Source: Selaginella moellendorffii
Taxonomy: Eukaryota > Plantae > Lycopodiophyta
NCBI RefSeq assembly: GCF_000143415.4
Contig: NW_003314263.1
Span: 347,114 to 411,113 of the forward strand
Length of the DNA stretch: 64,000 nucleotides
Direction: 5' to 3'
Shown here: positions 12,843 to 27,956 of the stretch, one piece after another
Layout of the letters: every line of letters starts with the position of its first letter
Position numbering within the stretch: the stretch's first letter is position 1
Translations under genes and position numbers: made by a program
The notes under the pieces: model-generated
Databases searched by the model: none
Told to the model about the DNA's origin: nothing
The model's input: the letters and a program-made list of their open reading frames with translations, nothing else

Positions 12843-13173
12843 GCGAGCGAGAAATCGTCACACCAAACAGGCACAGCAAAAGTTTTCCTCTTGCAACTAA
12901 AGTGTAAATTTGTGTTCTCTGTTGTGTTGTTTGCAGACGTAAATAGTGTAATAACTTTTGTACCCTGTGGAGGATGGGGAGAAGAAATGAGAAGAGAAGA
13001 GAGAAGTAAAGAAGAAGAAGAAGACCAGAGTGGTAGCACTGTAACGGGACGTCCTTTCTAACGTTCTTTATTTATGTTGGTAATTTTGTCGCTTTAAGTG
13101 TACATTTCTTTGTATAATCCACTACTTGGAGTTTTAGGGCTTGTGGGGAATTTAGGGTTTATGGGCTTTGGCG

Positions 13174-14269
13174 ATGGTGTTCGTTCTAGCGATCTTGCTG
13201 CTGCTCCCGATCGTGCTGCTCGCGCTGTGGGTTCTCAAGGTGCCGTCGTCTCCGGTGGAGATCCGTGGCAGGCACATTCTTATTTCTGGTGGATCGAGCG
13301 GGATCGGGCTTGAGCTCGCGAAGATTGCCGCTGCGCAGGGCGCGCGCAAGGTGACGCTCTTGGCGCGGAATGTCGAGAGGTTGAAGGAGGCCAGGGATGC
13401 GGTCGCGGCGGCTGTGAGTGGATCGAGTGACACGGAGGTGGGATTTGTCAGTGCCGATGTTTTGGATCGAGCAGGGCTGCGGAGGGCAATGGCTGAGGCT
13501 GGGGATGTGGATGTGCTGGTTTGCAGCCACGGGATTTCTATTCCTTGCGCGTTTGAGGATGCCAGAGACGAGGATCTCGACACGGTGGTGGGGATTAATT
13601 TCATGGGGACGATGAATGTGGTCAAGGCCGCGTTGCCAGGGATGGTGAGAGATGGCGGGGTGTATCCTCGCAGCATTGCGATCTTCTCTTCTCAAGCGGC
13701 CCAGGTACTTCTTTTCTTTTGGTCTTCTATCACGGTCTTCTTCTTTCGTAGGCTGGAATTTATGGATTCGCATGCTACTCGGGAGCAAAGGTTGCGCTGG
13801 TAAAATTCGCGGAGAGCCTCAAACAAGAGCTCTTCCTCCGGAAGATCCAGATTTCGGTCATCTATCCTCCTGACACAGACACTCCCGGACTCCGAGAAGG
13901 TATGCCTTTTCTCTTCCTCTTTTTCTCCTCTTCTCGTGTGTTAAAAGTGGTTCTTTCGTGAATGCAGAGAACAAGTTCAAACCGGAGATAACAAAGATCT
14001 TGTCTGAGTCCTCCAGTGCGATGGTGGCGATCGACGTCGCAAGAAAAGCCATGGACGGGATCAGAGCAGGGAGGTTCAACGTTTCTTGCAACTTTGATGG
14101 CCATCTTCTCGCCATCCTTTGCACAGGCATGTCTCCACACATGTCTGTTTGCTACAGTCTTGCAGAGATTGTCTTCCTTCCGGTCACGCGAATCATCTCG
14201 CTCTTCATACAATACGGATGGTACAGGACGATCCGAGCATGGCTTATCAAGCATAAGAAGTGCGTGTAA
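13174..14269 (+). CDS. TSC10: 3-ketodihydrosphingosine reductase (SDR family), 3 exons
   Basis: N-terminal TM helix, ISGGSSGIG, SSQAAQ, catalytic YSGAK, YPPDTDTPG and GRFNVSCNFDG...GMSP. Confidence 0.9.
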
Positions 14270-14623: not shown

Positions 14624-15337
14624 TATAAATTTTATTGGAATTGCCCTTTAGGACAAGATACACCAATAAACTCAACTCTGCCAATGTCTTATTTAATGGG
14701 AAATACATTAAGAAGAAACCTTGATTTACGTATTTTTATTTTACAACTTTTGTAGACTGGTGTTAATTCTCAAGGTAAGGCATTAGTCGAAAATAATCAA
14801 GTAGTGAATGTACTTAGAAGATATTCTTCCAATAATTTTGACAAATAAGCCAGCACATTCTTTAATGATTTCTTTTTATCCAGAGGTTGGAATATTTGGT
14901 TTATTATACAGTGTAAAAGGTTTCTTTCCAAAATCTCCATCTAATCCTGCTAGAGTATTAACAAAAATTCCCTTTTATTGCAACCCACTAAATACAAGGC
15001 TTATAAGTGGGTATAAAAAGTTGGACAAGCATTAATTGATTATATAAAACGTTTTACAATAATAATGCAATATGATTGTAATATTATATCTTATATTAGT
15101 GTTAATGCTTTTTGGAGTACAAAAACGTATGGGAAAATTTTTGATTGTAAATTGAAATTGCAAGAAGATGGTAATCTTGTTTTATATGGTGCTTTTGATA
15201 TAACTATGTATTGGTCAAGTAAAAGTTACTGTAGAAAATATAATTGTGCTATACTGTCAGAATTTCATGTTCAGAAAGATTGTAATTTAGTCATTTATCC
15301 AAATATACTAACATGGTCAAATGGTAAAGTTTGTTAA
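14624..15337 (+). pseudogene. Frameshifted, 5'-truncated copy of the bulb-type lectin gene at 19677-20525
   Basis: ORF pieces 14808-15035 and 15065-15337 match the 282-aa protein (PIILTN..FYCNPLNTRLISGYK; QEDGNLVLY, QKDCNLVIY) but are broken by indels. Confidence 0.85.
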
Positions 15338-15950
15338 CCATAATTACAATATAGTATAATATGATTATTATATAGTGCTATTAAACAATTTTAATATTTT
15401 AAATATATTCTAGACTGATTGATATATGTTCAAACTTTCAATCTTTGATACAAGAATAAGAAACACAGTGGATATTGTTGACAATTTTCACATGGAATCT
15501 TGACTCATTATTATATAGTTATCAGTATAGATAATTTAAATATTAAATAATAATTTACTGTGTATTGTATGTAGCAACATTTGGTTTTCTTAATAGTAAT
15601 GTTATTTTTATTTATTAATTTAATTGATCAAATGCAAGTTTAAAGCTACAAACATGTATATAATTTATATACTCAAGATTAATCTTATTGCATATCAACC
15701 ATTAAATGGTAAAATAAACTAAAATATACTAGTTTAGGAAAGTTTATAAATTATAAATACAAGTTTAATCTAAATAAATAACAAATGTTAGATGTTAGAT
15801 CCCATCCAAATATATTGCCTAATTAAACTTAAAAGCAGTACTCTTTCTGGATCTTGAGTTGTGTGAGCTCCACTGGGCTGAATTTCCTCTTGTTCCTTTG
15901 CAATGGTCACTCCATTCCCTTCGTCACTCTTTCCTACGCTTTTCATACAT
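14624..15950 (+). repeat. Left arm of a large inverted repeat (partner 18825-20433)
   Basis: Colinear reverse-complement similarity read by eye: 14624-15808 vs 20433-19219, and 15843-15950 vs ~18952-18825. Confidence 0.85.
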
Positions 15951-15979: not shown

Positions 15980-16430
15980 CGCGAGAGAAAATGCGAGGGC
16001 CTGGCAGTGATCCGCGCTTTTGAATCGATCGGCGTAGCAGCGCGAGCTCGAGAGCGAAGCTTTTTCTCGCGGGGGAGTTTGATAGCCCAATCCATCCAAA
16101 GAAACCCCTCGGGACAATCGGCGAGGAAAGGCGATCCAAGGCCAGCGCACGATGATCGCCCAGCAGGGCGAGAAGATGATCAAGAGGAAGAGGTGGCTTC
16201 GTCTCGGTCCGAGCGATGATGGCGTCGCTGAGAGACAGATCAAGCAGGAGGGTGTCACTCCACCACGCAAGAAGATAGCCGATCACGATCAGAGGTAACT
16301 TGGAGTTCTTGCGAGGTTCTTTGTGAGTTCCACGATCTCTGGAAGAACTGGTCTCTTTTTTTCTTGGGTTTCTTCCTGACAGCATGGATTCGCCTCCAGT
16401 GGCAGCGGGTGGCAGCAAAAGGTAGGAGCA
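15980..16430 (+). pseudogene. Internally deleted, inverted copy of the gene at 21284-22859
   Basis: ATG 15991 aligns to MRWPGSDPRF with a CGA->TGA nonsense change. It jumps to KQEGVTPPRKKIADHDQR and retains intron 1 and exon 2. Confidence 0.85.
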
Positions 16431-16518
16431 ATCAATGTGGAGTTTTTACCTCTCCTTTTATTGGATTTTTACCAACAATTAAGAACCCCTTTTTTAGGGT
16501 TCTTGAGTATTCACAGGA

Positions 16519-18294
16519 CTATCGCGTGGCGCATAGAAGATCCTCGCTCCACTCCTCGCTCCCGACGCAGTGGTGGCATCGGAAAATCCCCGCCGGATCG
16601 ACTCTCTTCTTGATCGCCAGCAGCCTCGTGTAATGTTCTCCAAACAGAGATTCTTGCCACTGGGGCTCACTGAAATCCGCCTCGTTCCCATACGCCCCCG
16701 ATCCGGGCGTGAGATCGATGAGCATCGCATTCGCGGCGCTCAGCTCCGCCCTGGCGCGCTGCTCGGCTCGATCGTCTCCGTCGCTCCAGCTTCTGCCGAG
16801 GATCACATGCCACAGCGCGCGGCGCCACGCGGGATTCACAGCATTGTCTCGATCGTCGCGGCTCACGGCGCCGCCCCCGACGAACACGCCAGTGAGGGAC
16901 ACGCGCGGGAAGAGCTCCCGGATGCGCACCATCACCTCGGCTAGATTCCCCGGCGAATATGCGACCGTTGTCCTTGGAATGAGCCGCGACGCCAGGAGCA
17001 GTGGAATCCCCGCGGTGGCGATGCCGGTGTTGGCGGTGTCCACATCGCGGCAGCTCGATCGCCCCTGGCATTGGATCGCCAATCGAAACTCCTGGAACGA
17101 GGGGAAGGATTGGAGGCTCCCGCTGGATCGGAGCTGGGGGTCCTCGCGCGCGAGCTCTTCCAGCGGTGCCGCGAGCGTGGCGTTGGCGAGCTCCATGCCG
17201 CGGTTTGGGAGGAGATACGAGAGCGTGAGCCCGGTGGTGTTGGTGATCGCGAAGGTCCCCGCCCAGCCGGCGCGCTCGAGCGAGGGGTGGAGCTCGGTGA
17301 ATCGAGCGAGTGTTCGCTGGAAGCTGGGCTTGTCCGGGGTTGAGAGGTTGTACTGCGCGAAGACGAGGCTGTCCAGCGCCGGGTAGAGCCTGTGCGTGGC
17401 GGTGACCGCGATGCCAAACGTTCCACCGCCGCCGCCGCGCATCGCCCAGTAGAGATCCTGGTTCTGGCAGCGATTGGCAACGACGAGGCTCCCATCCGCG
17501 GTCACCACCGAGAACTCCAGGACGTTGTCCGCGGCCAGGCCGAAAGTTGGCGAGAGTGGGCTGTGGCCTCCGCCCTGGGGATGGCCTCCGGCAGCTCCCA
17601 CCGAGCTCGATCCACCGCCGACGATCACGAACTTGCGATCAAACACCGCCTGGTAGAGCTCTTCCCACTGGACTCCAGCGCCGACCGTCACTGCCGGGAG
17701 GTACGTTGCGTCTTTCGATCGGCGAGAGCATCCTCTCGGGAGGAAGCGGTGGTGGAATCTCATGCTTTTCATTTGGTGTGTCCAGATGCTCAGCGCTCCC
17801 GCGGCGGTGCTCCGGCCGAGGTAGTCGTGACCGGTGTTCTTGACGACGAGGCGGAGGTTCCTGGCGGCCGCGAATCCCACCGCTGCTTGGATGTGGGAGG
17901 CTTTTCTCGCTGCTACTGTGTAGATTGGCACCGAGCCTTGCGAGCACGTTGAGTTTCGAGGGGAGTCTATCGAGCAGCGATCGGTGATACCGTTTGATTC
18001 CCAGTTGCTGGCTTGCATGGCTCCCGGCTGGTCCGCCCTCCAGAACGGGAAGCTCCATCGCTGGCGTGCCTCTCGGCAGGCTCGCCGATTGAAAGCTGGA
18101 TCGTGGCAAGGAGAGGCCGGAGGAACCACGCGGATGAGCTTTCCATCGATGGAGGCGTTGAAGGTGGCCCAGGATTGAGAGTCGGGCCAGCAGTGGCGAT
18201 CGAAGGCTGTGCATTGGCATGGAGGCCGGAAGGATTGAGCCAACTGGAATGCGACGATCACGATGAGGAGCAGAGGTAGCGCGGCTGTTTTCAT
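16519..18294 (-). CDS. Secreted FAD-linked oxidoreductase (VAO/BBE-like, FAD_binding_4 + BBE), fungal-type, intronless
   Basis: Signal peptide MKTAALPLLLIVIVAFQLAQS, CWPDSQSWATFN, LVVKNTGHDYLGRS, VGAAGGHPQGGGHSPLS, DLYWAMRGGGGGTFG, GAYGNEAD and DPAGIFRCHHCVGSE. Confidence 0.9.
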   Translation of the reverse strand: MKTAALPLLLIVIVAFQLAQSFRPPCQCTAFDRHCWPDSQSWATFNASIDGKLIRVVPPASPCHDPAFNRRACREARQRWSFPFWRADQPGAMQASNWESNGITDRCSIDSPRNSTCSQGSVPIYTVAARKASHIQAAVGFAAARNLRLVVKNTGHDYLGRSTAAGALSIWTHQMKSMRFHHRFLPRGCSRRSKDATYLPAVTVGAGVQWEELYQAVFDRKFVIVGGGSSSVGAAGGHPQGGGHSPLSPTFGLAADNVLEFSVVTADGSLVVANRCQNQDLYWAMRGGGGGTFGIAVTATHRLYPALDSLVFAQYNLSTPDKPSFQRTLARFTELHPSLERAGWAGTFAITNTTGLTLSYLLPNRGMELANATLAAPLEELAREDPQLRSSGSLQSFPSFQEFRLAIQCQGRSSCRDVDTANTGIATAGIPLLLASRLIPRTTVAYSPGNLAEVMVRIRELFPRVSLTGVFVGGGAVSRDDRDNAVNPAWRRALWHVILGRSWSDGDDRAEQRARAELSAANAMLIDLTPGSGAYGNEADFSEPQWQESLFGEHYTRLLAIKKRVDPAGIFRCHHCVGSEEWSEDLLCATR

Positions 18295-18824: not shown

Positions 18825-20433
18825 TGTATGGAAAGTGTAGAGGAATGATGAGGAAAGAGTGACCAAGGGAATGGAATGACCATTGCAAAGGAACAAAAGG
18901 AAATTCAGCCCAGTGGAGCTCACACAACTCCCAGTGCATCCAAGATCCAGAAAGAATTGTGCTTGAATTCCTCTCGGTCTAAGAAAGGGAAACAAAGAAA
19001 ATGGGATGGATCACTGTGGTTGCCATTCTCGGCTCAACATTTCGCTGACAAATGTCATCACTAAGCTCATGTCAAAGCAATTAAACATAAATGTAACCAG
19101 GATTTTTAATTTTTTTTATTGGATAAATTATCTTAAGACTTTAAATTTTTAAATTAATAATAATTAATATTTATAGATTTTTTTGCTTAAGGGAGAAGTG
19201 GATATACTGAGCATATGCTTGGATGTTCTAGGTCTACCATCTAACGGTTGTTATTTATTTAGATTAATTTTATATTTATAATTTATAAAGTTTCCTAGAC
19301 ACTTCCTAGTATATTTTAGCTTATTTTAAATAAGATTAATCTTGTTTTTATAAATTATAAACATTTTTATAAGTATAAACTTGCATTTGATCAATTAGAT
19401 TAATAAATATAAATAACACTATTATTTATACCAAGCATTGATGTGCAGTAGATTATTGTTTAATATTTAAATCATCTAAAATTATAAATTTATAACAATA
19501 ACATTCCACGTCAAGATTCCACGTGAATATTGTCAACAATATAAACTGTGTTTCTTATTCTTGTACCAAAGATTGAAAGTTTAAACAAATATCAATCAGT
19601 CTAGAATACATTTAAAATATTAGAAATGTTTACTATCACTATATAATACTTGTATTATACTATATTGTAATCATGGTTAACAAACTTTACCATTTGAACA
19701 TGTTAGTATATTTGGCTTTCCATCTCTATAAATGACTAAATTACAATCTTTTTGAACATGAAATTCTGATAGTACAGCACAATTATATTTTCTACAGTAA
19801 CTTTTACTTGACCAATAATTAGTTATATCAAAAGCACCATATAAAACAAGATTACCATCTTCTTGCAATCTCAATTTACAATCAAAACTTTTCCCATACG
19901 TTTTTGTACTCCAAAAAACATTAGCACTAATATAAAATACAATATTACAATCATATTGCATTATTATTGTAAAACGTTTTATATAATCAATTAATTCTTG
20001 TCCAGCTTTTAATGTTGCTAATGGCATATCTTTATACCCACTTATAAGCCTTGTATTTAGTGGGTTGCAATAAAAGGGAATTTTTGTTAATACTTCAGCA
20101 GTATTAGATGGAGATTTTGGAAAGAAACCTCTTACACTGTATAATAAACCAAATATTCCAACCTCTGGATCAAAAACAATCATTAAAAAATGTGCTGGGC
20201 TATTTGTCAAAATTATTGGAACAATATCTGCACCAGCTCTTCTCATTACTTGATTATTTTCGACTAATGCCTTAACTTGAGAATTAACACCACAGTCTAC
20301 AAAATTTGTAAAAATAAAAATACGTAAATCAATTGTTGTTAGTAATCTAGTTCTTATTAAATAAGACATTGGCAGAGTTGAGTTTATTAGTGTATATTGT
20401 CCTGAAGGAAGTGCAATTCCAATACAATTTATA
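18825..20433 (-). repeat. Right arm of the large inverted repeat (partner 14624-15950)
   Basis: Same alignment as the left arm. It carries about 260 bp (18955-19218) that is largely absent from the left arm. Confidence 0.85.
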
Positions 20434-20525
20434 AGAGCACTTACAACCATAATAGGATTTATATTTAAAAATGTTAAAGCTGTTTCGTATGCAAAATATT
20501 CAAAATATGATATATTAGTATTCAT
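19677..20525 (-). CDS. Protein with an unknown N-terminal domain and a C-terminal bulb-type (GNA-like) mannose-binding lectin domain
   Basis: Intact 282-aa ORF in very AT-rich DNA with three QxDxNxVxY motifs: QYDCNIVFY, QEDGNLVLY, QKDCNLVIY. Confidence 0.75.
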   Translation of the reverse strand: MNTNISYFEYFAYETALTFLNINPIMVVSALINCIGIALPSGQYTLINSTLPMSYLIRTRLLTTIDLRIFIFTNFVDCGVNSQVKALVENNQVMRRAGADIVPIILTNSPAHFLMIVFDPEVGIFGLLYSVRGFFPKSPSNTAEVLTKIPFYCNPLNTRLISGYKDMPLATLKAGQELIDYIKRFTIIMQYDCNIVFYISANVFWSTKTYGKSFDCKLRLQEDGNLVLYGAFDITNYWSSKSYCRKYNCAVLSEFHVQKDCNLVIYRDGKPNILTCSNGKVC

Positions 20526-21283
20526 TCTTACAAGAATTATAGAAATAACTGGTGTAAATGTTTCAGTGTGTGTGTGTGTCTATATATATTACAACTCACA
20601 ATCATTTTGAAACTGTTTCTTATAATTTCTAACTATTCATAAAGTTATAAATAGTTTATCATATTATTAGTCACTACTTACAATAACTTTTCAAGTAGCA
20701 AAAGATCTTGTTTAGCCTATATTCAAATTTCCATATCTTATTTATAATTTGAAAAGTGGACATATATCTATTAACTTATTTAACAGAAATAGTATAACTA
20801 TTATTAGACAAGATAATTAACACATGGATGGCCGAGTTTACTGACGATAGAGAACCAGTGAATCTCAATGTTGCAGAAAGAAGTAGTCCTCTCAAATGTT
20901 TTAGCACAGGTGATGGAATTCTCAGGTCTGAAGCTCAATCACTCTTTGCTATTAAAGTGAAACCTCACGAATGAACAGAATTTAGTAATTTTATTTATCA
21001 AAAAAATTTCCCTCAAGACATTGCTTCACTCGGTGATCCAAGCTGTGAAATATTTTGATCATGTGGATGCCCAGAAGATCCCTGTTTGGAGAACATTACC
21101 TGCGGCTGCTGGCGATCAAAGTCGATCCCAGGGATTTTCTGATACCGCGCGTCGGGAAAATACTCAAGAACCAACTATACATCAGAGGCAGCAAATGCTG
21201 GTAAATTCGAAAAGGTGACAAACTCTCCACTTGCAGCAGCAAATGCCCATAGAGGGCATTGCAGGGAATCTCTCGATCATACT

Positions 21284-22859
21284 TTAGCGATCGGGTGGCG
21301 GCGAGGATGGGAGAGGAGGCGGCGGCGAAGATGGTAGCGGAGGAGGAAAAGCGTCCTCCATTTCCACATCCTCATCAAACGGGGCAATCCATTCTTCACG
21401 AAAACTAGAAGAACACAAGAGAAAGAATGAAGAACTTGAGCCAAAATCTTTGCTCCTACCTTTTGCTGCCAGCCGCTGCCACTGGAGCCGAAACCATGCT
21501 GTCAGGACGAAACCCCCCCAAAAAAAGAGAAAGCAAAATCAGTTCTTCCAAAGATCGTGGAACTCGCAAAGAACCTCGCAAGAACTCAAGTTACCTCTGA
21601 TCGTGATCGGCTATCTTCTTGCGCGGTGGAGTGATACCCTCCTGCTTGATCTTCAAATACTTGTCTCTCAGCGACGCCACCATCGCTCGTCCCCTCTCGA
21701 CCTCGCCGCGGAGCAATCGAATATCTTCTCTCTGCCTGGCGATGATCACACGATCTCTATTCTCCTCCTGGATCATCGTCTGGACGCTGGCATCGCACTG
21801 CTGCTTGCGCTGGATGCTCGAGTGGACGTCCTCCGCGATCACCATCTTATCCGTGAGCACCCCCGCGTGATCCTTCTCCGCGCGATCTTGCTGCCCGAGC
21901 TTGTGATCCTCTTCCACGCGACCTTGATCTTGCTGCCCGAGCTTGTTCTTGATGATCCCAGTGAGCCACTCGCCGTGAGCAAACGTGCTCTTCCTCCTGG
22001 AGCTCGTCTTCGCGCCACGGGCGATCATCTTTCCCAGGTACTCCGCCCATCGCATCTTGATACCGAGCTTGTACGATCGATCCAGCGCGAGGAGGACCTC
22101 CACCGGCACGCAATGGAAGCACTCGCGGCGGGCGACGAGCTTCACCATAAGCATCATGCAAATCGCCTTCCACGCCTCCACATTCTCGCCAAGAACAAGG
22201 GCATCCACAGAGTAGCCGCGAGAGCTGTACTCCTTGAGATCGAGCACGATCGCGCCCAAGGCCGATCTCTCCTCCTTGGTCAGCACTGCCGAGGTCGAGA
22301 TCTCGCCACCATCGTCGCCGATCGGGAGCCTGGTGGCCGCAGAGACGCTGGCGGCATCGATCACCACGCGCTCACCTCTGACCATGGCGCTGGAGTTCCA
22401 AGGATCGAAATTTGTGAGGAACTCGTCGCAGAGGGAGCGATCGAGGGGCGGGAGGGGCTGCGCCGCGAACTCGTCCAGGCCCAGGGCGGCCAGGATCCGT
22501 CGCGCGCTGGGCTCCGCGAGGATGGGATCAAGATCCACGTCCCAGACCTTGCGGTAGACGAAGCCAGTGGGGATGGCGAACTTGGCCCCGTACCTCTTCC
22601 TCCTCTTCTTGATCATCTTCTCTCCCTGCTGCTGCTGCTGCTGCTGCTGGGCGATCATCGCGCGCTGGCCTCGGATCGCCTTGCCTCGCCGATGGAATGT
22701 CCGGAGGGTCCGGAGCTTCTGTGGATGGATTGGGCGATTCTCTGGAGCTACGATCCTCCAACACCGGGGCACATTCCTCGCGAGAAAAAGCTTCGCTCTC
22801 GAGCTCGCGCTGCTGCGCCGATCGATTCGAAAGCGCGGATCACTGCCAGGCCATCGCAT
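21284..22859 (-). CDS. Three-exon gene with a putative plant-transposon-derived domain, a coiled coil and a Pro-rich tail
   Basis: 422-aa exon 1 contains LCDEFLTNFD..MVRGERVVIDAASVSAATRLP. Two phase-compatible GT-AG introns join SMVSAPVAAAGSK and SFREEWIAPFDEDVEMEDAFPPPLPSSPPPPLPSSPPPDR*. Confidence 0.65.
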
Positions 22860-22992
22860 TTTCTCTCTCGCGGTTCACTAGCAAAGTATGTCCTTGTGTA
22901 GTACTAAAGGATAAGGTAATTAACTAATTCACGCTAACCGTACCACGCGTCCGTACGTCAAAAACTGCTAGACGAATATTCGACTATGATAA

Positions 22993-26260: not shown

Positions 26261-26424
26261 ATCCAAGTTTTTTCAAAGTAAGGCACTGTTTTTGGCAGTT
26301 GGTTGGGGTAAGATTTTCCTGGATGAACACAAGAACAAGTCCTGCTGAAACCCACCGCATATAAAAAATAACAGCGACAAGTTTTTTAAGGAAAAAGCTC
26401 TAAGTTGACACACAGCCACATACT

Positions 26425-27956
26425 TCAGCGATTGGGTAGCGGCGAGGATGGGAGAGGCGGCGGCGGTGAAGATAGGAAACGCATTCTCCATTTCCACATC
26501 CTCATCAAACGGGGCAATCCCTTCTTTACGAAAACTAGAAGAACACAAGAGAAAGAGTGAAGAAAACCCACAACTTTGATGCAAAATCTATCTTTTCTTG
26601 CCAGCCGCTGCCCACTGGACGCGAATCCATGCTGTCAGGACGAAACCCAAGAAGAAAAAAAAGAAAAAAAAACCCATCAGTCTTCCAAAGATCGTGGAAC
26701 TCGCAAGAACCTCGCCAAACTCCAAGTTACCTCTGATCGATCTTCTTGCGCTGTGGAGTGATAGCCCCTTGCTTGCTCTGCTCTTTCAGCGAGGCCACAA
26801 TCGCTCGTCCCCGCTCGACGTACCCGCGGAGCAATCGAATCTCTTCTCTCAGCTTGGCGGGCTCCCGATCTCTCCCTCCATCCTCCTGGAACGCTGGCAT
26901 CGAGCTGCTGCCTGCGCTGGATGCTCGAGTGAAGATCGCGCGGAGAAGGAGGAGGATCACGCGGGCGTGCTCACGGACAAGATGGTGATCGCCGAGGACG
27001 TCGCTGCCCAAGCTTGTGATCCTCGTCCAAGCGAACTTGATCTTGCTGTCCGAGCTTGTTCTTGATGATCCCAGTGAGCCACTCGCCGTGAGTGCTCTTC
27101 CTCTTGGGGCTCGTTTTCGCGCCGCGGGTGATCATCTTTCCCAGGTACTCCGCCCACCGCATCTTGATACCGAGCTTGCACGATCGATCCAGCGCGAGGA
27201 GCATCTCCACCGGCACGGAATGGAAGCACTCGCGGCGGGCGACGAGCTTCACCATAAGCATCATGCAAATCGCCTTCCACGCCTCCACATTTTCGCCAAG
27301 AACAAGGTCGTGGACAGAGTATCCGCGAAAGGTGTGCTCCTTGACATCGAGCATGATCCTTGACGATGAGCATCGAACATCGAACGCCCAATGCCGATCG
27401 TTCCTCCTTCGTCAGCACTGCCCCGGTGGAAGAAATCTTATCGTGCTCCAAGTCGCCGATCGGGAGCCCGGTGGCCGCAGAGACGCTGGTGGCGTCGATC
27501 ACCACGCGCTCGCCTCTGACCATGGAGCTCCGATGATCGAAGTTTGTGAAGAACTCGTCGCAGAGGGAGCGATCGAGGGGCGGGAGGGGCTGCGCCACGA
27601 ACTCGTCCAGGCCCAGGGCCTCCTGGAGCTGCCGCGCGCTGGGCTCCGCGAGAATGGGAAGATCCACGTCCCAGGAGGAAGCCAGTGGGAGTGGCGAACC
27701 TGGCCCCATTCCTGATCTTCTTCCTCTTGATCGTCTTCTTCCTCTTGATCCTGCTGGGCGATAACCGCGCGCTTGCCTTGGATCGCCTTGCTCCGCCGCT
27801 GAATGTCCGGAGCTTCTTTGGATGCTTTGGATGGATTGGGCGAGCTACGATAGCAAGCTCCTCCAACACCGGGGCACATTCCTCGTGAGAAAAAGTTTCG
27901 GTCGCGAGCTCGCGCTGCTGCGCCGATCGATTTCTATAGCGTGGATCACCTCCCAC
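26425..27956 (-). pseudogene. Frameshifted second full-length copy of the 21284-22859 gene
   Basis: Homologous peptides are split over four frames (27438-27956, 26957-27709, 26971-27354, 26727-27011). Both introns and the last exons are retained. Confidence 0.85.

What the first reader, a model, noticed from the sequence alone, without database searches (positions are those of the whole stretch)
16519..18294. Fungal-type FAD-linked oxidoreductase in a plant genome: horizontal transfer candidate
The flavinylation motif is VKNTGHDYLGRS rather than the seed-plant BBE-like RxRSGGHDYEG. The second (Cys) flavin-attachment position reads SSSVG instead of CPTVG. The N-terminal CWP..W..FN block and C-terminal DPxGxFxCxxCVGSE resemble fungal isoamyl-alcohol-oxidase/ZEB1-type enzymes. 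The gene is intronless and GC-rich beside AT-rich flanks. Fungal origin and monocovalent FAD are inferences from motifs.
Basis: partly seen in the sequence, partly recalled or inferred. Interest (0 to 1): 0.7.

Follow-up and report, generated by a model that had tools for sequence, protein, structure and literature searches.

The report
Fungal-type flavin oxidase gene in Selaginella
An intact, intron-free gene in the spikemoss Selaginella encodes a secreted flavin oxidase of a type centred on fungi; it belongs to a gene family shared with ferns that most likely entered early vascular plants from a fungus, though the trees do not prove it.

Summary
Window 16519-18294 (-) is one 591-codon ORF with FAD_binding_4 and BBE domains.

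The window is genuine plant DNA: neighbours are PPR-E, TCP and PUF genes. It is allelic to Selaginella moellendorffii scaffold GL377567.1.

The protein belongs to the MtVAO615/MtVAO713 subclass of VAO-type oxidases (283 and 237 bits; model TM 0.83-0.89). It is not a canonical plant BBE-like enzyme (72 bits or less). His156 aligns with the flavin-linked His and Ser229 with the Cys/Ser position, so a single covalent flavin link is the sound inference.

It is one of about 18 Selaginella sequences (some are allelic pairs or fragments). These form one clade with fern genes (bootstrap 99-100). That clade sits next to Mortierellomycota, Calcarisporiella, Basidiobolus and bdelloid rotifers (92-95). 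An ancient fungus-to-tracheophyte transfer is the best reading. However, the AU test does not reject un-nested plants (p 0.106).

GC richness is host-like, not a foreign signature. The AT-rich flanks are arms of a local inverted repeat.

No transcripts of this copy appeared in three RNA-seq runs; paralogs are expressed.

The scan has already flagged this family on other pieces of this genome (s1-363803, s1-419658).

The parts
16519..18294 (-). Complete intronless coding sequence (591 codons plus TAG) of a FAD_binding_4 + BBE flavoprotein oxidase
   Evidence: ORF list. Pfam. Full-length alignment to homologs. Allelic single-exon gene model P0001, 98% identical.
18232..18294 (-). Residues 1-21, a hydrophobic N-terminal stretch (MKTAALPLLLIVIVAFQLAQS) read as a secretion signal. 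The cleavage site is inferred, not computed.
   Evidence: Sequence. Helix 5-20 with low pLDDT in the model. In MtVAO615/713 the first 26 residues are signal sequences.
17479..17925 (-). FAD_binding_4 domain, residues 124-272
   Evidence: Pfam PF01565, E 5.5e-18.
17827..17829 (-). Codon of His156 (CAC), predicted 8-alpha-N1-histidyl flavin attachment site
   Evidence: Aligns with His157 of MtVAO615 and His159 of MtVAO713. Invariant in 290 of 291 non-plant eukaryote rows and in all full-length plant rows.
17608..17610 (-). Codon of Ser229 (TCG), at the position of the 6-S-cysteinyl link. Ser here predicts a monocovalent flavin.
   Evidence: SSSVG aligns with C222-P-T-V-G of MtVAO615. MtVAO713 has Ser231 and is monocovalent. 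Six Selaginella paralogs have Cys at this position.
17599..17601 (-). Codon of Val232, the small 'gatekeeper' residue that permits reaction with O2
   Evidence: Aligns with Val225 of MtVAO615. Val in 277 of 291 non-plant eukaryote rows.
16681..16683 (-). Codon of Glu538 (in GNEAD), the Glu that replaces the usual catalytic Tyr in this subclass
   Evidence: Aligns with Glu519 of MtVAO615. Conserved in nearly all family members.
16567..16695 (-). BBE (berberine-like) C-terminal domain, residues 534-576, ending in the CxxCVGSE motif
   Evidence: Pfam PF08031, E 7.1e-11. Cys573 and Cys576 are conserved in most eukaryotic members and mostly absent in the bacterial relatives.
14624..15950 (+). Left arm of a local inverted repeat (27% GC) with broken B-lectin-like ORFs
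   Evidence: the repeat finder I1-I6, I9, I11, I12. blastn 84% over 1233 nt to the right arm. Weak B_lectin hit, E 8e-4, below the cut-off.
18851..20530 (-). Right arm of the inverted repeat with an intact 282-aa B-lectin-like ORF (19677-20525, GC3 11%)
   Evidence: Both arms are also present in the allelic haplotype.
21073..21652 (+). Remnant of a second, head-to-head oxidase copy. It holds residues 547-567 (21073-21129) and its 3' flank, an inverted copy of 16237-16651.
   Evidence: tblastn 76% over 21 aa. Inverted pairs I7, I8, I10, I13. blastn to L081.

Best explanation
What the gene encodes. It is a secreted, disulfide-rich, N-glycosylated flavoprotein oxidase of the VAO/PCMH superfamily, in the MtVAO615/MtVAO713 subclass. 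FAD is predicted to be bound by one covalent link, from His156 to the 8-alpha-methyl group. The usual second link is absent because Ser229 replaces the Cys.

How it most likely works (inferred). With Glu538 in place of the usual catalytic Tyr and a small gatekeeper residue (Val232), the enzyme should take a hydride from an alcohol-type substrate and pass the electrons to O2, giving H2O2. The substrate is unknown. The nearest tested relatives act weakly on bulky secondary alcohols or have no known substrate.

Where it comes from. The gene is one of about 18 Selaginella moellendorffii sequences of this family; some of these are allelic pairs or fragments. Together with fern genes they form one clade whose nearest relatives are early-diverging fungi (Mortierellomycota, Calcarisporiella, Umbelopsis, Basidiobolus) and bdelloid rotifers. 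The most likely history is a single transfer from a Mucoromycota-like fungus into an ancestor of vascular plants. That was followed by early duplication, loss in seed plants and expansion in Selaginella.

This particular copy. It lies in a local hotspot of inverted duplication. It is intact and mildly constrained, but it was not seen transcribed in the RNA runs sampled.

Shown: gene structure, domains, residue correspondences, fold, genomic integration, family distribution among the best hits, tree topology. Inferred: secretion, monocovalent flavinylation, oxidase chemistry, direction and date of the transfer.

The confidence given is for the whole statement. The enzyme class alone is about 0.9, and the fungal origin of the tracheophyte clade about 0.7.
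For: Enzyme class:
- Pfam domains are above their cut-offs.
- PDB sequence search gives MtVAO615 4.3e-83 and MtVAO713 3.3e-69, against 72 bits or less for plant BBE-likes.
- The AlphaFold model has mean pLDDT 87.6. It matches 6f72 and 6f74 at TM 0.83-0.89 and E about 1e-47; the next hit is at 1e-26.
- The experimental meaning of those residues comes from PMC6017366.

Host integration:
- PPR-E, TCP, NABP/PUF and DEAD genes lie in the same window.
- The allelic locus on GL377567.1 is collinear over about 20 kb.
- Paralog P0014 is also intronless and sits among LRR-kinase and rhomboid genes.

Distribution:
- The best hits are Selaginella, Adiantum and Ceratopteris, then fungi of all major phyla and rotifers.
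- No seed plant or alga appears in three top-120 lists, nor inside the plant clade among the 150 best 50%-identity representatives.

Trees:
- LG+C20 careful tree: tracheophyte clade 100/97, plus 11 early-diverging fungi 93/87, plus rotifers 92/96.
- The LG+G4 careful tree gives the same topology at 99/97, 88/85 and 95/97, and so does the 99-row quick tree.
- Ferns nest among Selaginella paralogs, and Selaginella monophyly is rejected (AU p 0.014).

Other support:
- The N- and C-terminal cysteines are shared with eukaryotic members and mostly absent in the bacterial relatives.
- The two alleles differ at 21 sites and both ORFs are intact; dN/dS is about 0.30.
- Paralogs P0004/P0005 and P0003 are transcribed.
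Against: - The AU test does not reject a tree with all fungi plus rotifers held together, that is, with plants not nested (delta lnL 30.4, p 0.106).
- The exact fungal sister group changes with model and sampling. It is Umbelopsis/Gongronella in the 328-row FastTree and Mortierellomycota plus Calcarisporiella in the careful trees.
- The family is patchy well beyond fungi. It occurs in moss, tardigrade, choanoflagellate, diplonemid and diverse bacteria, so sources other than fungi are conceivable.
- The searches list only the best 120 or 150 hits, so weaker plant or algal members could be hidden.
- No unique-fit RNA reads for this copy were seen in three runs, with about 12% of each run read.
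- No biochemical data exist for any plant member. MtVAO615, the closest solved relative, has no known substrate.
- Composition gives no independent sign of foreign origin.
Confidence: 0.68

Rival explanations
1. Vertical inheritance. The family is an old eukaryotic gene that plants inherited and lost many times. It now survives only in Selaginella, some ferns and a moss.
For: The family also occurs in a choanoflagellate, a diplonemid, a tardigrade, rotifers and bacteria. The AU tests do not reject plants lying outside fungi (p 0.106) or all plants forming one clade (p 0.163).
Against: The trees do not follow the species tree: rotifers and tracheophytes sit among Mucoromycota-type fungi at 92-97 support. 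No alga or seed plant appears among the best hits. This history would need losses in most green lineages. The animal carriers (bdelloids, tardigrade) are lineages that I know from the literature, not from a test here, to hold many foreign genes.
Confidence: 0.12
2. Several separate transfers. Selaginella, ferns and moss each acquired the gene on their own, or ferns obtained it from a lycophyte.
For: The moss pair lies apart from the tracheophyte clade, next to tardigrade and protist sequences. Ferns nest inside the Selaginella paralogs, which a lycophyte-to-fern transfer would also produce.
Against: Selaginella plus ferns form one clade at 99-100 bootstrap with no fungal sequence inside it in the careful trees. 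Two fern subclades each contain both Adiantum and Ceratopteris, which suggests vertical descent within ferns. All plants as one clade is not rejected.
Confidence: 0.1
3. Bacterial donor. The plant genes came from bacteria that carry full-length relatives.
For: Ten bacterial loci encode relatives that cover residues 35-585 at 29-42% identity, some with a CWP-like N-terminal block and twin-arginine signals.
Against: The bacterial sequences form their own long-branched clade outside the plant, fungus and rotifer group. They are less similar than fungal proteins (about 45%). They mostly lack the conserved N- and C-terminal cysteines and have Phe instead of His244.
Confidence: 0.03
4. The gene is an ordinary member of the canonical plant BBE-like family, or it is fungal contamination of the assembly.
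For: It carries the same two Pfam domains as plant BBE-like enzymes.
Against: Plant BBE-likes score only 56-72 bits against 283 for MtVAO615, and Foldseek gives 1e-26 against 1e-48. The gene is flanked by plant-specific genes on one contig. It is present in two haplotypes with host-like codon composition.
Confidence: 0.01

Closest known systems
MtVAO615 of Myceliophthora thermophila (PDB 6f72/6f73)
   Same: Best sequence match (283 bits, about 31% identity) and best structural match (TM 0.83/0.89). It shares the same extra N-terminal Cys-rich segment and loops, the flavin-linked His in the NTGHDYLG motif, Tyr after the His, Val gatekeeper, His244 and Glu in place of the catalytic Tyr, and a secretion signal.
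   Different: MtVAO615 has Cys222 and a bicovalent FAD, whereas the query has Ser229. MtVAO615 is an ascomycete enzyme; the query's nearest relatives are early-diverging fungi. Its substrate is unknown, so it gives no functional transfer.
MtVAO713 of M. thermophila (PDB 6f74), a relative of the Hypomyces secondary-alcohol oxidase and Nomuraea ecdysteroid-22-oxidase
   Same: Same subclass and fold (237 bits, TM 0.84/0.87). It has Ser at the Cys position with experimentally shown monocovalent histidyl-FAD, and Glu in place of the catalytic Tyr. It is a true oxidase.
   Different: Only about 28% identical. Its gatekeeper is Pro, not Val. It has a hydrophobic pocket and weak activity on ricinoleic acid, and nothing shows that the plant enzyme shares this substrate.
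Canonical plant BBE-like enzymes (EcBBE, AtBBE15, THCA synthase, Phl p 4; PpBBE1 of Physcomitrella)
   Same: Same superfamily and the same two Pfam domains. All are secreted and have a covalent histidyl-FAD.
   Different: They score only 56-72 bits at 16-20% identity. They lack the N-terminal CWP block and the C-terminal CVGSE end. Most are bicovalent with a catalytic Tyr. They are not the clade in which this gene sits.
Published fungus-to-plant transfers into early land plants
   Same: Same kind of event. A 2025 review (PMC12448838) tabulates Richards et al. 2009, listing three lycophyte cases. PMC5982333 reports a Physcomitrella FAD_binding_4/BBE gene as fungus-derived. In all these a fungal-type gene is integrated in a seed-free plant genome.
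   Different: No paper in the held library names this family in Selaginella or ferns. Richards 2009 and Ma 2022 are not held, so prior listing cannot be excluded. I could not test whether the Physcomitrella gene of PMC5982333 belongs to this subclass.

Membership tests
VAO/PCMH flavoprotein superfamily, BBE-like group | FAD_binding_4 (PF01565) domain followed by a C-terminal BBE (PF08031) domain, both above Pfam's gathering scores | tested here: met
   65.5 bits (cut-off 26.4) and 42.4 bits (cut-off 20.6).
VAO/PCMH flavoprotein superfamily, BBE-like group | His for 8-alpha-N1-histidyl FAD linkage in the conserved GHD motif | tested here: met
   His156 aligns with His157 and His159 of the solved enzymes. 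The covalent bond itself is not testable here.
MtVAO615/MtVAO713 subclass | Closest sequence and fold match to these two structures, with their extra N-terminal segment and loops | tested here: met
   E 4.3e-83 and 3.3e-69, with alignment starting at residue 19-23. Foldseek E about 1e-47, a 20-order gap to the next fold match.
MtVAO615/MtVAO713 subclass | Glu in place of the catalytic Tyr (position 519/543), and a small gatekeeper residue that allows O2 access | tested here: met
   Glu538 and Val232 by alignment.
MtVAO615/MtVAO713 subclass | Rapid reoxidation of the reduced enzyme by O2 (true oxidase) | not testable with these tools
   Needs purified protein. Shown only for the two fungal enzymes.
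Bicovalent (6-S-cysteinyl, 8-alpha-N1-histidyl) flavoproteins, including canonical plant BBE-like enzymes | Cys at the position of Cys222 of MtVAO615 (Cys166 of EcBBE) | tested here: not met
   Ser229 in this gene. Cys is present in six other Selaginella paralogs and in one Ceratodon gene.
Canonical plant BBE-like clade | Closest relatives are seed-plant BBE-like proteins | tested here: not met
   72 bits or less against plant BBE-like structures, compared with 283 for MtVAO615. No seed-plant protein appears in the top lists.
Horizontally acquired gene (fungus to plant) | Physically integrated in the recipient genome, not a contaminant contig | tested here: met
   Plant-specific neighbours lie on the same 64-kb window. 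The locus is allelic in a second haplotype on a 4.46-Mb scaffold.
Horizontally acquired gene (fungus to plant) | Recipient sequences nested within donor diversity with strong support on a rooted tree | tested here: inconclusive
   Nested at UFBoot/SH-aLRT 92/96 (C20 model) and 95/97 (LG) on a bacteria-rooted tree. However, AU p 0.106 for the un-nested alternative.
Horizontally acquired gene (fungus to plant) | Absent from the recipient's other relatives (algae, seed plants) | tested here: inconclusive
   None among the best 120 or 150 hits of four searches, and none inside the plant clade of a 328-row tree. Lower-ranked hits were not visible, and not all plant genomes are in the collections.
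ZEB1 / Hpm9 / isoamyl-alcohol-oxidase type fungal alcohol oxidases | Orthology to those characterised enzymes | not tested
   No reference sequence was available through the tools. There is only the indirect link through MtVAO713, which is 59% identical to the Hypomyces enzyme by PMC6017366. The query is about 28% identical to MtVAO713.

The most novel reading that the evidence does not exclude
A secreted oxidase of a Mucoromycota-type fungus, the group I know from the literature to have formed the earliest plant-fungus symbioses, entered the common ancestor of vascular plants, or even of all land plants. It had duplicated before lycophytes and ferns split. It has been kept for more than 400 million years only in seed-free lineages. 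There it diversified, with about 18 sequences in Selaginella and repeated switching between His-only and His+Cys flavin linkage, to supply an apoplastic H2O2-forming or specialised-metabolite activity that seed plants cover with other enzymes.
Probability: 0.25. Interest if true: 0.65.

Novelty: new member of a known kind. Interest (0 to 1): 0.5.

Why it matters
If the transfer is real, it adds a well-delimited enzyme family to the short list of fungus-to-plant gene transfers. It is also one that was kept and expanded in lycophytes and ferns but is missing from seed plants. That makes it useful for dating early plant-fungus contact.

The plant genes also give a second kingdom in which to look for the natural substrate of an orphan oxidase subclass. 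MtVAO615 has no known substrate.

Paralogs with Ser or Cys at the second flavin-link position form a natural series for studying mono- versus bicovalent flavinylation.

For genome annotation, the result shows that counts of 'BBE-like' genes in Selaginella based on Pfam domains mix two unrelated lineages.

Tried and rejected
- **Composition as a sign of foreign origin: rejected.** The TCP gene in the window has the same GC and GC3, and the AT-rich flanks are repeat arms.
- **Shared synteny between moss and Selaginella: rejected.** An adh_short gene lies beside the oxidase in both, but the two genes show no similarity. The Selaginella one looks, from my own reading, like a ketosphinganine-reductase-type SDR.
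- **Inverted-repeat arms as a dispersed transposon carrying the oxidase: not supported.** The arms occur only as this pair in the window and are absent from the P0014 locus.
- **Lectin-like ORF.** Pfam gives only a sub-threshold B_lectin hit and the Atlas search was blank.
- **Technical failures.** The C20-mixture tree on 99 rows did not finish. The AU test under the mixture model made no progress, so the AU tests were run under LG+G4, which is more prone to false rejection.
- **Literature.** Richards et al. 2009 could not be opened by DOI or by the PMC id I guessed. Ma et al. 2022 is not held. Six full-text searches found no paper on this family in lycophytes or ferns.
- **Genomic context of fern gene P0100.** The look-up returned nothing on record.
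- **Expression of this copy.** Almost all laid reads fit only short conserved stretches, and their overhangs translate to paralogs P0004/P0005 and P0003. Two 151-nt contigs of run X1 fit this copy, but that run's kind (RNA or DNA) is only a guess.
Full report

Yes. Window 16519-18294 on the minus strand is a single ORF from ATG to TAG, 591 codons. Pfam places FAD_binding_4 at residues 124-272 and BBE at 534-576, both well above their cut-offs. The quoted motifs are all present: CWPD at 35, NTGHDY at 153 (His156), SSSVG at 229, GNEAD at 536 and CVGSE at 576.

The ORF aligns over its whole length with fungal homologs and shows no internal gaps that would suggest introns. The allelic NCBI gene model is a single 1776-nt exon.

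The gene is 64% GC with GC3 of 76%. The DNA farther out on both sides is 27-28% GC.

**2. Which genome, and is the gene part of it?**

The window carries plant-type genes: a PPR protein with an E motif, a TCP transcription factor, a PUF/NABP protein, a DEAD helicase and a class 3 lipase. The best protein hit is a Selaginella moellendorffii protein, 98% identical and also 591 aa. NCBI names it "uncharacterized FAD-linked oxidoreductase ARB_02478".

Its locus on scaffold GL377567.1 (4.46 Mb) is collinear with the window over about 20 kb. Identity is 95.7-97.2% in the flanks. The coding sequence differs at only 21 of 1776 positions. The window is therefore an allelic haplotype, or a very close accession, of S. 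moellendorffii. Contamination is excluded.

**3. What kind of enzyme is it?**

Against all solved structures, the two best sequence matches are MtVAO615 (283 bits) and MtVAO713 (237 bits). Both are from the fungus Myceliophthora thermophila. Canonical plant BBE-like enzymes reach only 56-72 bits; these include AtBBE15, EcBBE, THCA synthase, Phl p 4 and Physcomitrella PpBBE1.

An AlphaFold model (mean pLDDT 87.6, pTM 0.88) matches the same two structures at TM 0.83-0.89 and E about 1e-47. The next hit is at E 1e-26.

The paper describing those enzymes (PMC6017366) reports the following:
- MtVAO615 has FAD bound through His157 and Cys222.
- MtVAO713 has FAD bound through His159 only, with Ser231 at the Cys position.
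- Both have Glu where related oxidases have a catalytic Tyr.
- Both have a small gatekeeper residue and react fast with O2.
- MtVAO713 weakly oxidises ricinoleic acid. MtVAO615 has no known substrate.

In the HMMER alignment the correspondences are:

| Query residue | MtVAO615 residue | Role |
|---|---|---|
| His156 | His157 | flavin-linked His |
| Ser229-Ser-Ser-Val-Gly | Cys222-Pro-Thr-Val-Gly | second flavin-link position |
| Val232 | Val225 | gatekeeper |
| His244 | His237 | active-site His |
| Glu538 | Glu519 | replaces catalytic Tyr |

The N-terminus is a hydrophobic stretch of about 21 residues. There are five N-x-S/T sites and 14 cysteines, as expected for a secreted protein. The cleavage site is my inference.

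**4. The family in plants.**

Three word-indexed searches and one exhaustive HMMER search found the following:
- about 18 S. moellendorffii sequences, some of them allelic pairs or fragments;
- genes in the ferns Adiantum nelumboides, A. capillus-veneris and Ceratopteris richardii;
- three fern-like contigs from read assemblies;
- two genes in the moss Ceratodon purpureus.

No seed plant or alga appears in any top list.

In a 328-row FastTree of everything fetched, the smallest clade holding all Selaginella and fern rows also holds 12 other sequences. All 12 turned out to be Umbelopsis or Gongronella, that is, Mucoromycotina.

Paralog P0014 is also intronless and lies among LRR-kinase, rhomboid and La-protein genes. 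The Ceratodon gene P0323 spans 2004 nt for 586 aa, so it has acquired intron sequence.

Across plant members His156, Val232 and Glu538 are essentially invariant. The second-link position is Ser in this gene's subgroup and in all ferns. It is Cys in six Selaginella paralogs and one moss gene. Both linkage types are therefore predicted within the plant family.

**5. Where did it come from?**

Non-plant members come from every major fungal phylum: Chytridiomycota, Blastocladiomycota, Zoopagomycota, Mucoromycota, Ascomycota and Basidiomycota. They also come from bdelloid rotifers, the tardigrade Paramacrobiotus, a choanoflagellate and a diplonemid. Ten bacterial loci encode full-length but more distant relatives (29-42% identity, some with twin-arginine signals).

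I built three trees rooted on distant actinobacterial FAD oxidases:
- **Careful LG+C20+F+G4 tree, 61 rows by 570 columns.** The Selaginella plus fern clade gets 100/97 (ultrafast bootstrap/SH-aLRT). It joins Mortierellomycota, Calcarisporiella and Basidiobolus at 93/87, and that group joins the rotifers at 92/96. Chytrids, Dikarya, Umbelopsis, the moss pair and the close bacterial clade lie outside in an unresolved base.
- **Careful LG+G4 tree.** Same picture, at 99/97, 88/85 and 95/97.
- **Quick 99-row tree.** Same picture.

Ferns sit inside the Selaginella paralogs, with P0022 and P0122 (97/88).

AU tests under LG+G4 gave:

| Constraint | p-AU |
|---|---|
| All fungi plus rotifers held together (plants not nested) | 0.106 |
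| All plants including moss as one clade | 0.163 |
| Selaginella genes as one clade | 0.014 |

The Selaginella group was named after the tree had been seen, so that p value should be read with care.

My reading is as follows. The topology and the distribution favour a transfer from a Mucoromycota-like fungus. The transfer predates the lycophyte/fern split, and at least two or three paralog lineages already existed by then. Neither the direction nor the number of events (one for tracheophytes, perhaps a separate one for mosses) is statistically settled.

The conserved N- and C-terminal cysteines are shared with eukaryotic members. They are mostly absent in the bacterial relatives, which also have Phe for His244. 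This argues against a bacterial donor.

**6. What the composition and the flanks really are.**

The gene's GC and GC3 equal those of the plant-specific TCP gene in the same window. They are close to those of the lipase gene. Composition is therefore host-like and says nothing about origin.

The AT-rich flanks are the two arms of an inverted repeat, 14624-15950 and 18851-20530. Blocks are 87-96% complementary, and overall identity is about 84% with gaps. An earlier scan note (s1-380667) pointed me to this.

The arms carry a B-lectin-like ORF of extreme AT content. The right copy is intact (282 aa, GC3 11%) and the left copy is broken. The arms occur only as this pair in the window.

Further right, 21073-21652 holds a remnant of a second oxidase copy in head-to-head orientation. 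It contains residues 547-567 plus the 3' flank.

The other haplotype has the same arms plus a 3.2-kb insertion. That insertion holds a further partial inverted copy (P0006, 401 aa), which lacks the His156 region.

The locus is thus a small hotspot of inverted duplication and decay. This fits a family that grows by local duplication.

**7. Is this copy in use?**

Both alleles keep the full ORF. They differ at 11 synonymous and 10 non-synonymous sites, which gives dN/dS of about 0.30. The counts are small, so this is only mild evidence of constraint.

In three RNA-seq runs of the same species label (about 12% of each run read), depth over the unique parts of the gene is zero. The reads that do land fit only two short conserved stretches. 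Their overhangs translate to peptides unique to paralogs P0004/P0005 and P0003. So the family is transcribed, but this copy is not shown to be.

Two 151-nt contigs from run X1 fit this copy exactly or with one difference. Whether that run is RNA or DNA is only a guess.

**8. Comparison with what is known.**

The enzyme works like, and by every feature testable here belongs to, the MtVAO615/713 subclass. It fails the defining Cys of the bicovalent plant BBE-like enzymes and is not in their clade.

Fungus-to-plant transfer into seed-free plants is a known kind of event. A 2025 review tabulates three lycophyte cases from Richards et al. 2009. Another paper calls a Physcomitrella FAD_binding_4/BBE gene fungus-derived.

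I found no paper in the held library that names this family in Selaginella or ferns. The two most relevant surveys are not held, so earlier listing cannot be excluded.

The scan itself has flagged the same family on two other pieces of this genome. One earlier follow-up (s1-363803) reached the same general verdict.
- the moss, tardigrade and protist members;
- the explicit AU tests;
- the Ser/Cys variation among paralogs;
- the inverted-repeat context;
- the lack of reads for this copy.

**9. Verdict.**

This is a genuine plant gene of a fungus-centred oxidase subclass. It is most likely the product of an ancient transfer into early vascular plants, not a recent or isolated event. The compositional argument should be dropped. 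Interest is moderate: a further, well-delimited case of a known phenomenon, attached to a biochemically orphan enzyme class.

Noticed in passing
window 14624-15950 and 18851-20530: A 1.3-1.7 kb inverted repeat brackets the oxidase gene. It is 27% GC, with blocks 87-96% complementary. Its arms carry a B-lectin-like ORF with extreme AT bias. The right copy (19677-20525, minus strand) is intact at 282 aa with GC3 11%; the left copy is broken. Pfam B_lectin is only sub-threshold and the Atlas search was blank.
   Followed up: partly
window 21073-21652; L081 3974-4190 and 6204-7685: Remnant of a second, head-to-head oxidase copy, holding residues 547-567 plus the 3' flank. The allelic haplotype GL377567.1 also carries a 3.2-kb insertion with a partial inverted copy (P0006, 401 aa, no His156 region) that the window lacks.
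   Followed up: partly
window 21450-22901 (both strands) and 26419-27949: Long overlapping ORFs with no Pfam hit (483 aa on the plus strand, 422 aa on the minus strand with a poly-Q run). The stretch is repeated at 78% identity about 5 kb away, as seen through L081 2240-3794. It is probably a repeated element.
   Followed up: no
P0132, P0146, P0156, P0203 (related proteins): Members of the same oxidase family occur in the tardigrade Paramacrobiotus metropolitanus, the choanoflagellate Salpingoeca helianthica and the diplonemid Namystynia karyoxenos. In a FastTree they group with the two Ceratodon moss genes, not with the Selaginella/fern clade.
   Followed up: partly
L001-L010 (bacterial loci): Diverse bacterial genomes and MAGs encode full-length relatives. 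They include Halioglobus, Acidimicrobiaceae, Chthonomonas, Kofleriaceae and Aurantimicrobium. Some have twin-arginine-type signals. In the five aligned (L001, L003, L005, L006, L008), Cys occupies the second flavin-link position and Phe replaces His244. All ten form one clade.
   Followed up: partly
P0022 (Selaginella paralog, 717 aa): The annotated protein joins the oxidase to an MtN3/SWEET domain (PF03083). This is probably a fused gene model, not a real fusion.
   Followed up: no
window 13168-13803 (+); L083 11225-12400: A short-chain dehydrogenase gene lies next to the oxidase both in Selaginella and in Ceratodon. The two dehydrogenases show no similarity, so the shared neighbourhood is coincidence.
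   Followed up: yes
P0011, P0017, P0320-P0322 (fungal proteins of 1000-1185 aa): Several basidiomycete and ascomycete proteins of about twice the normal length score very high against the plant profile. They may be tandem double-domain oxidases or fused gene models.
   Followed up: no
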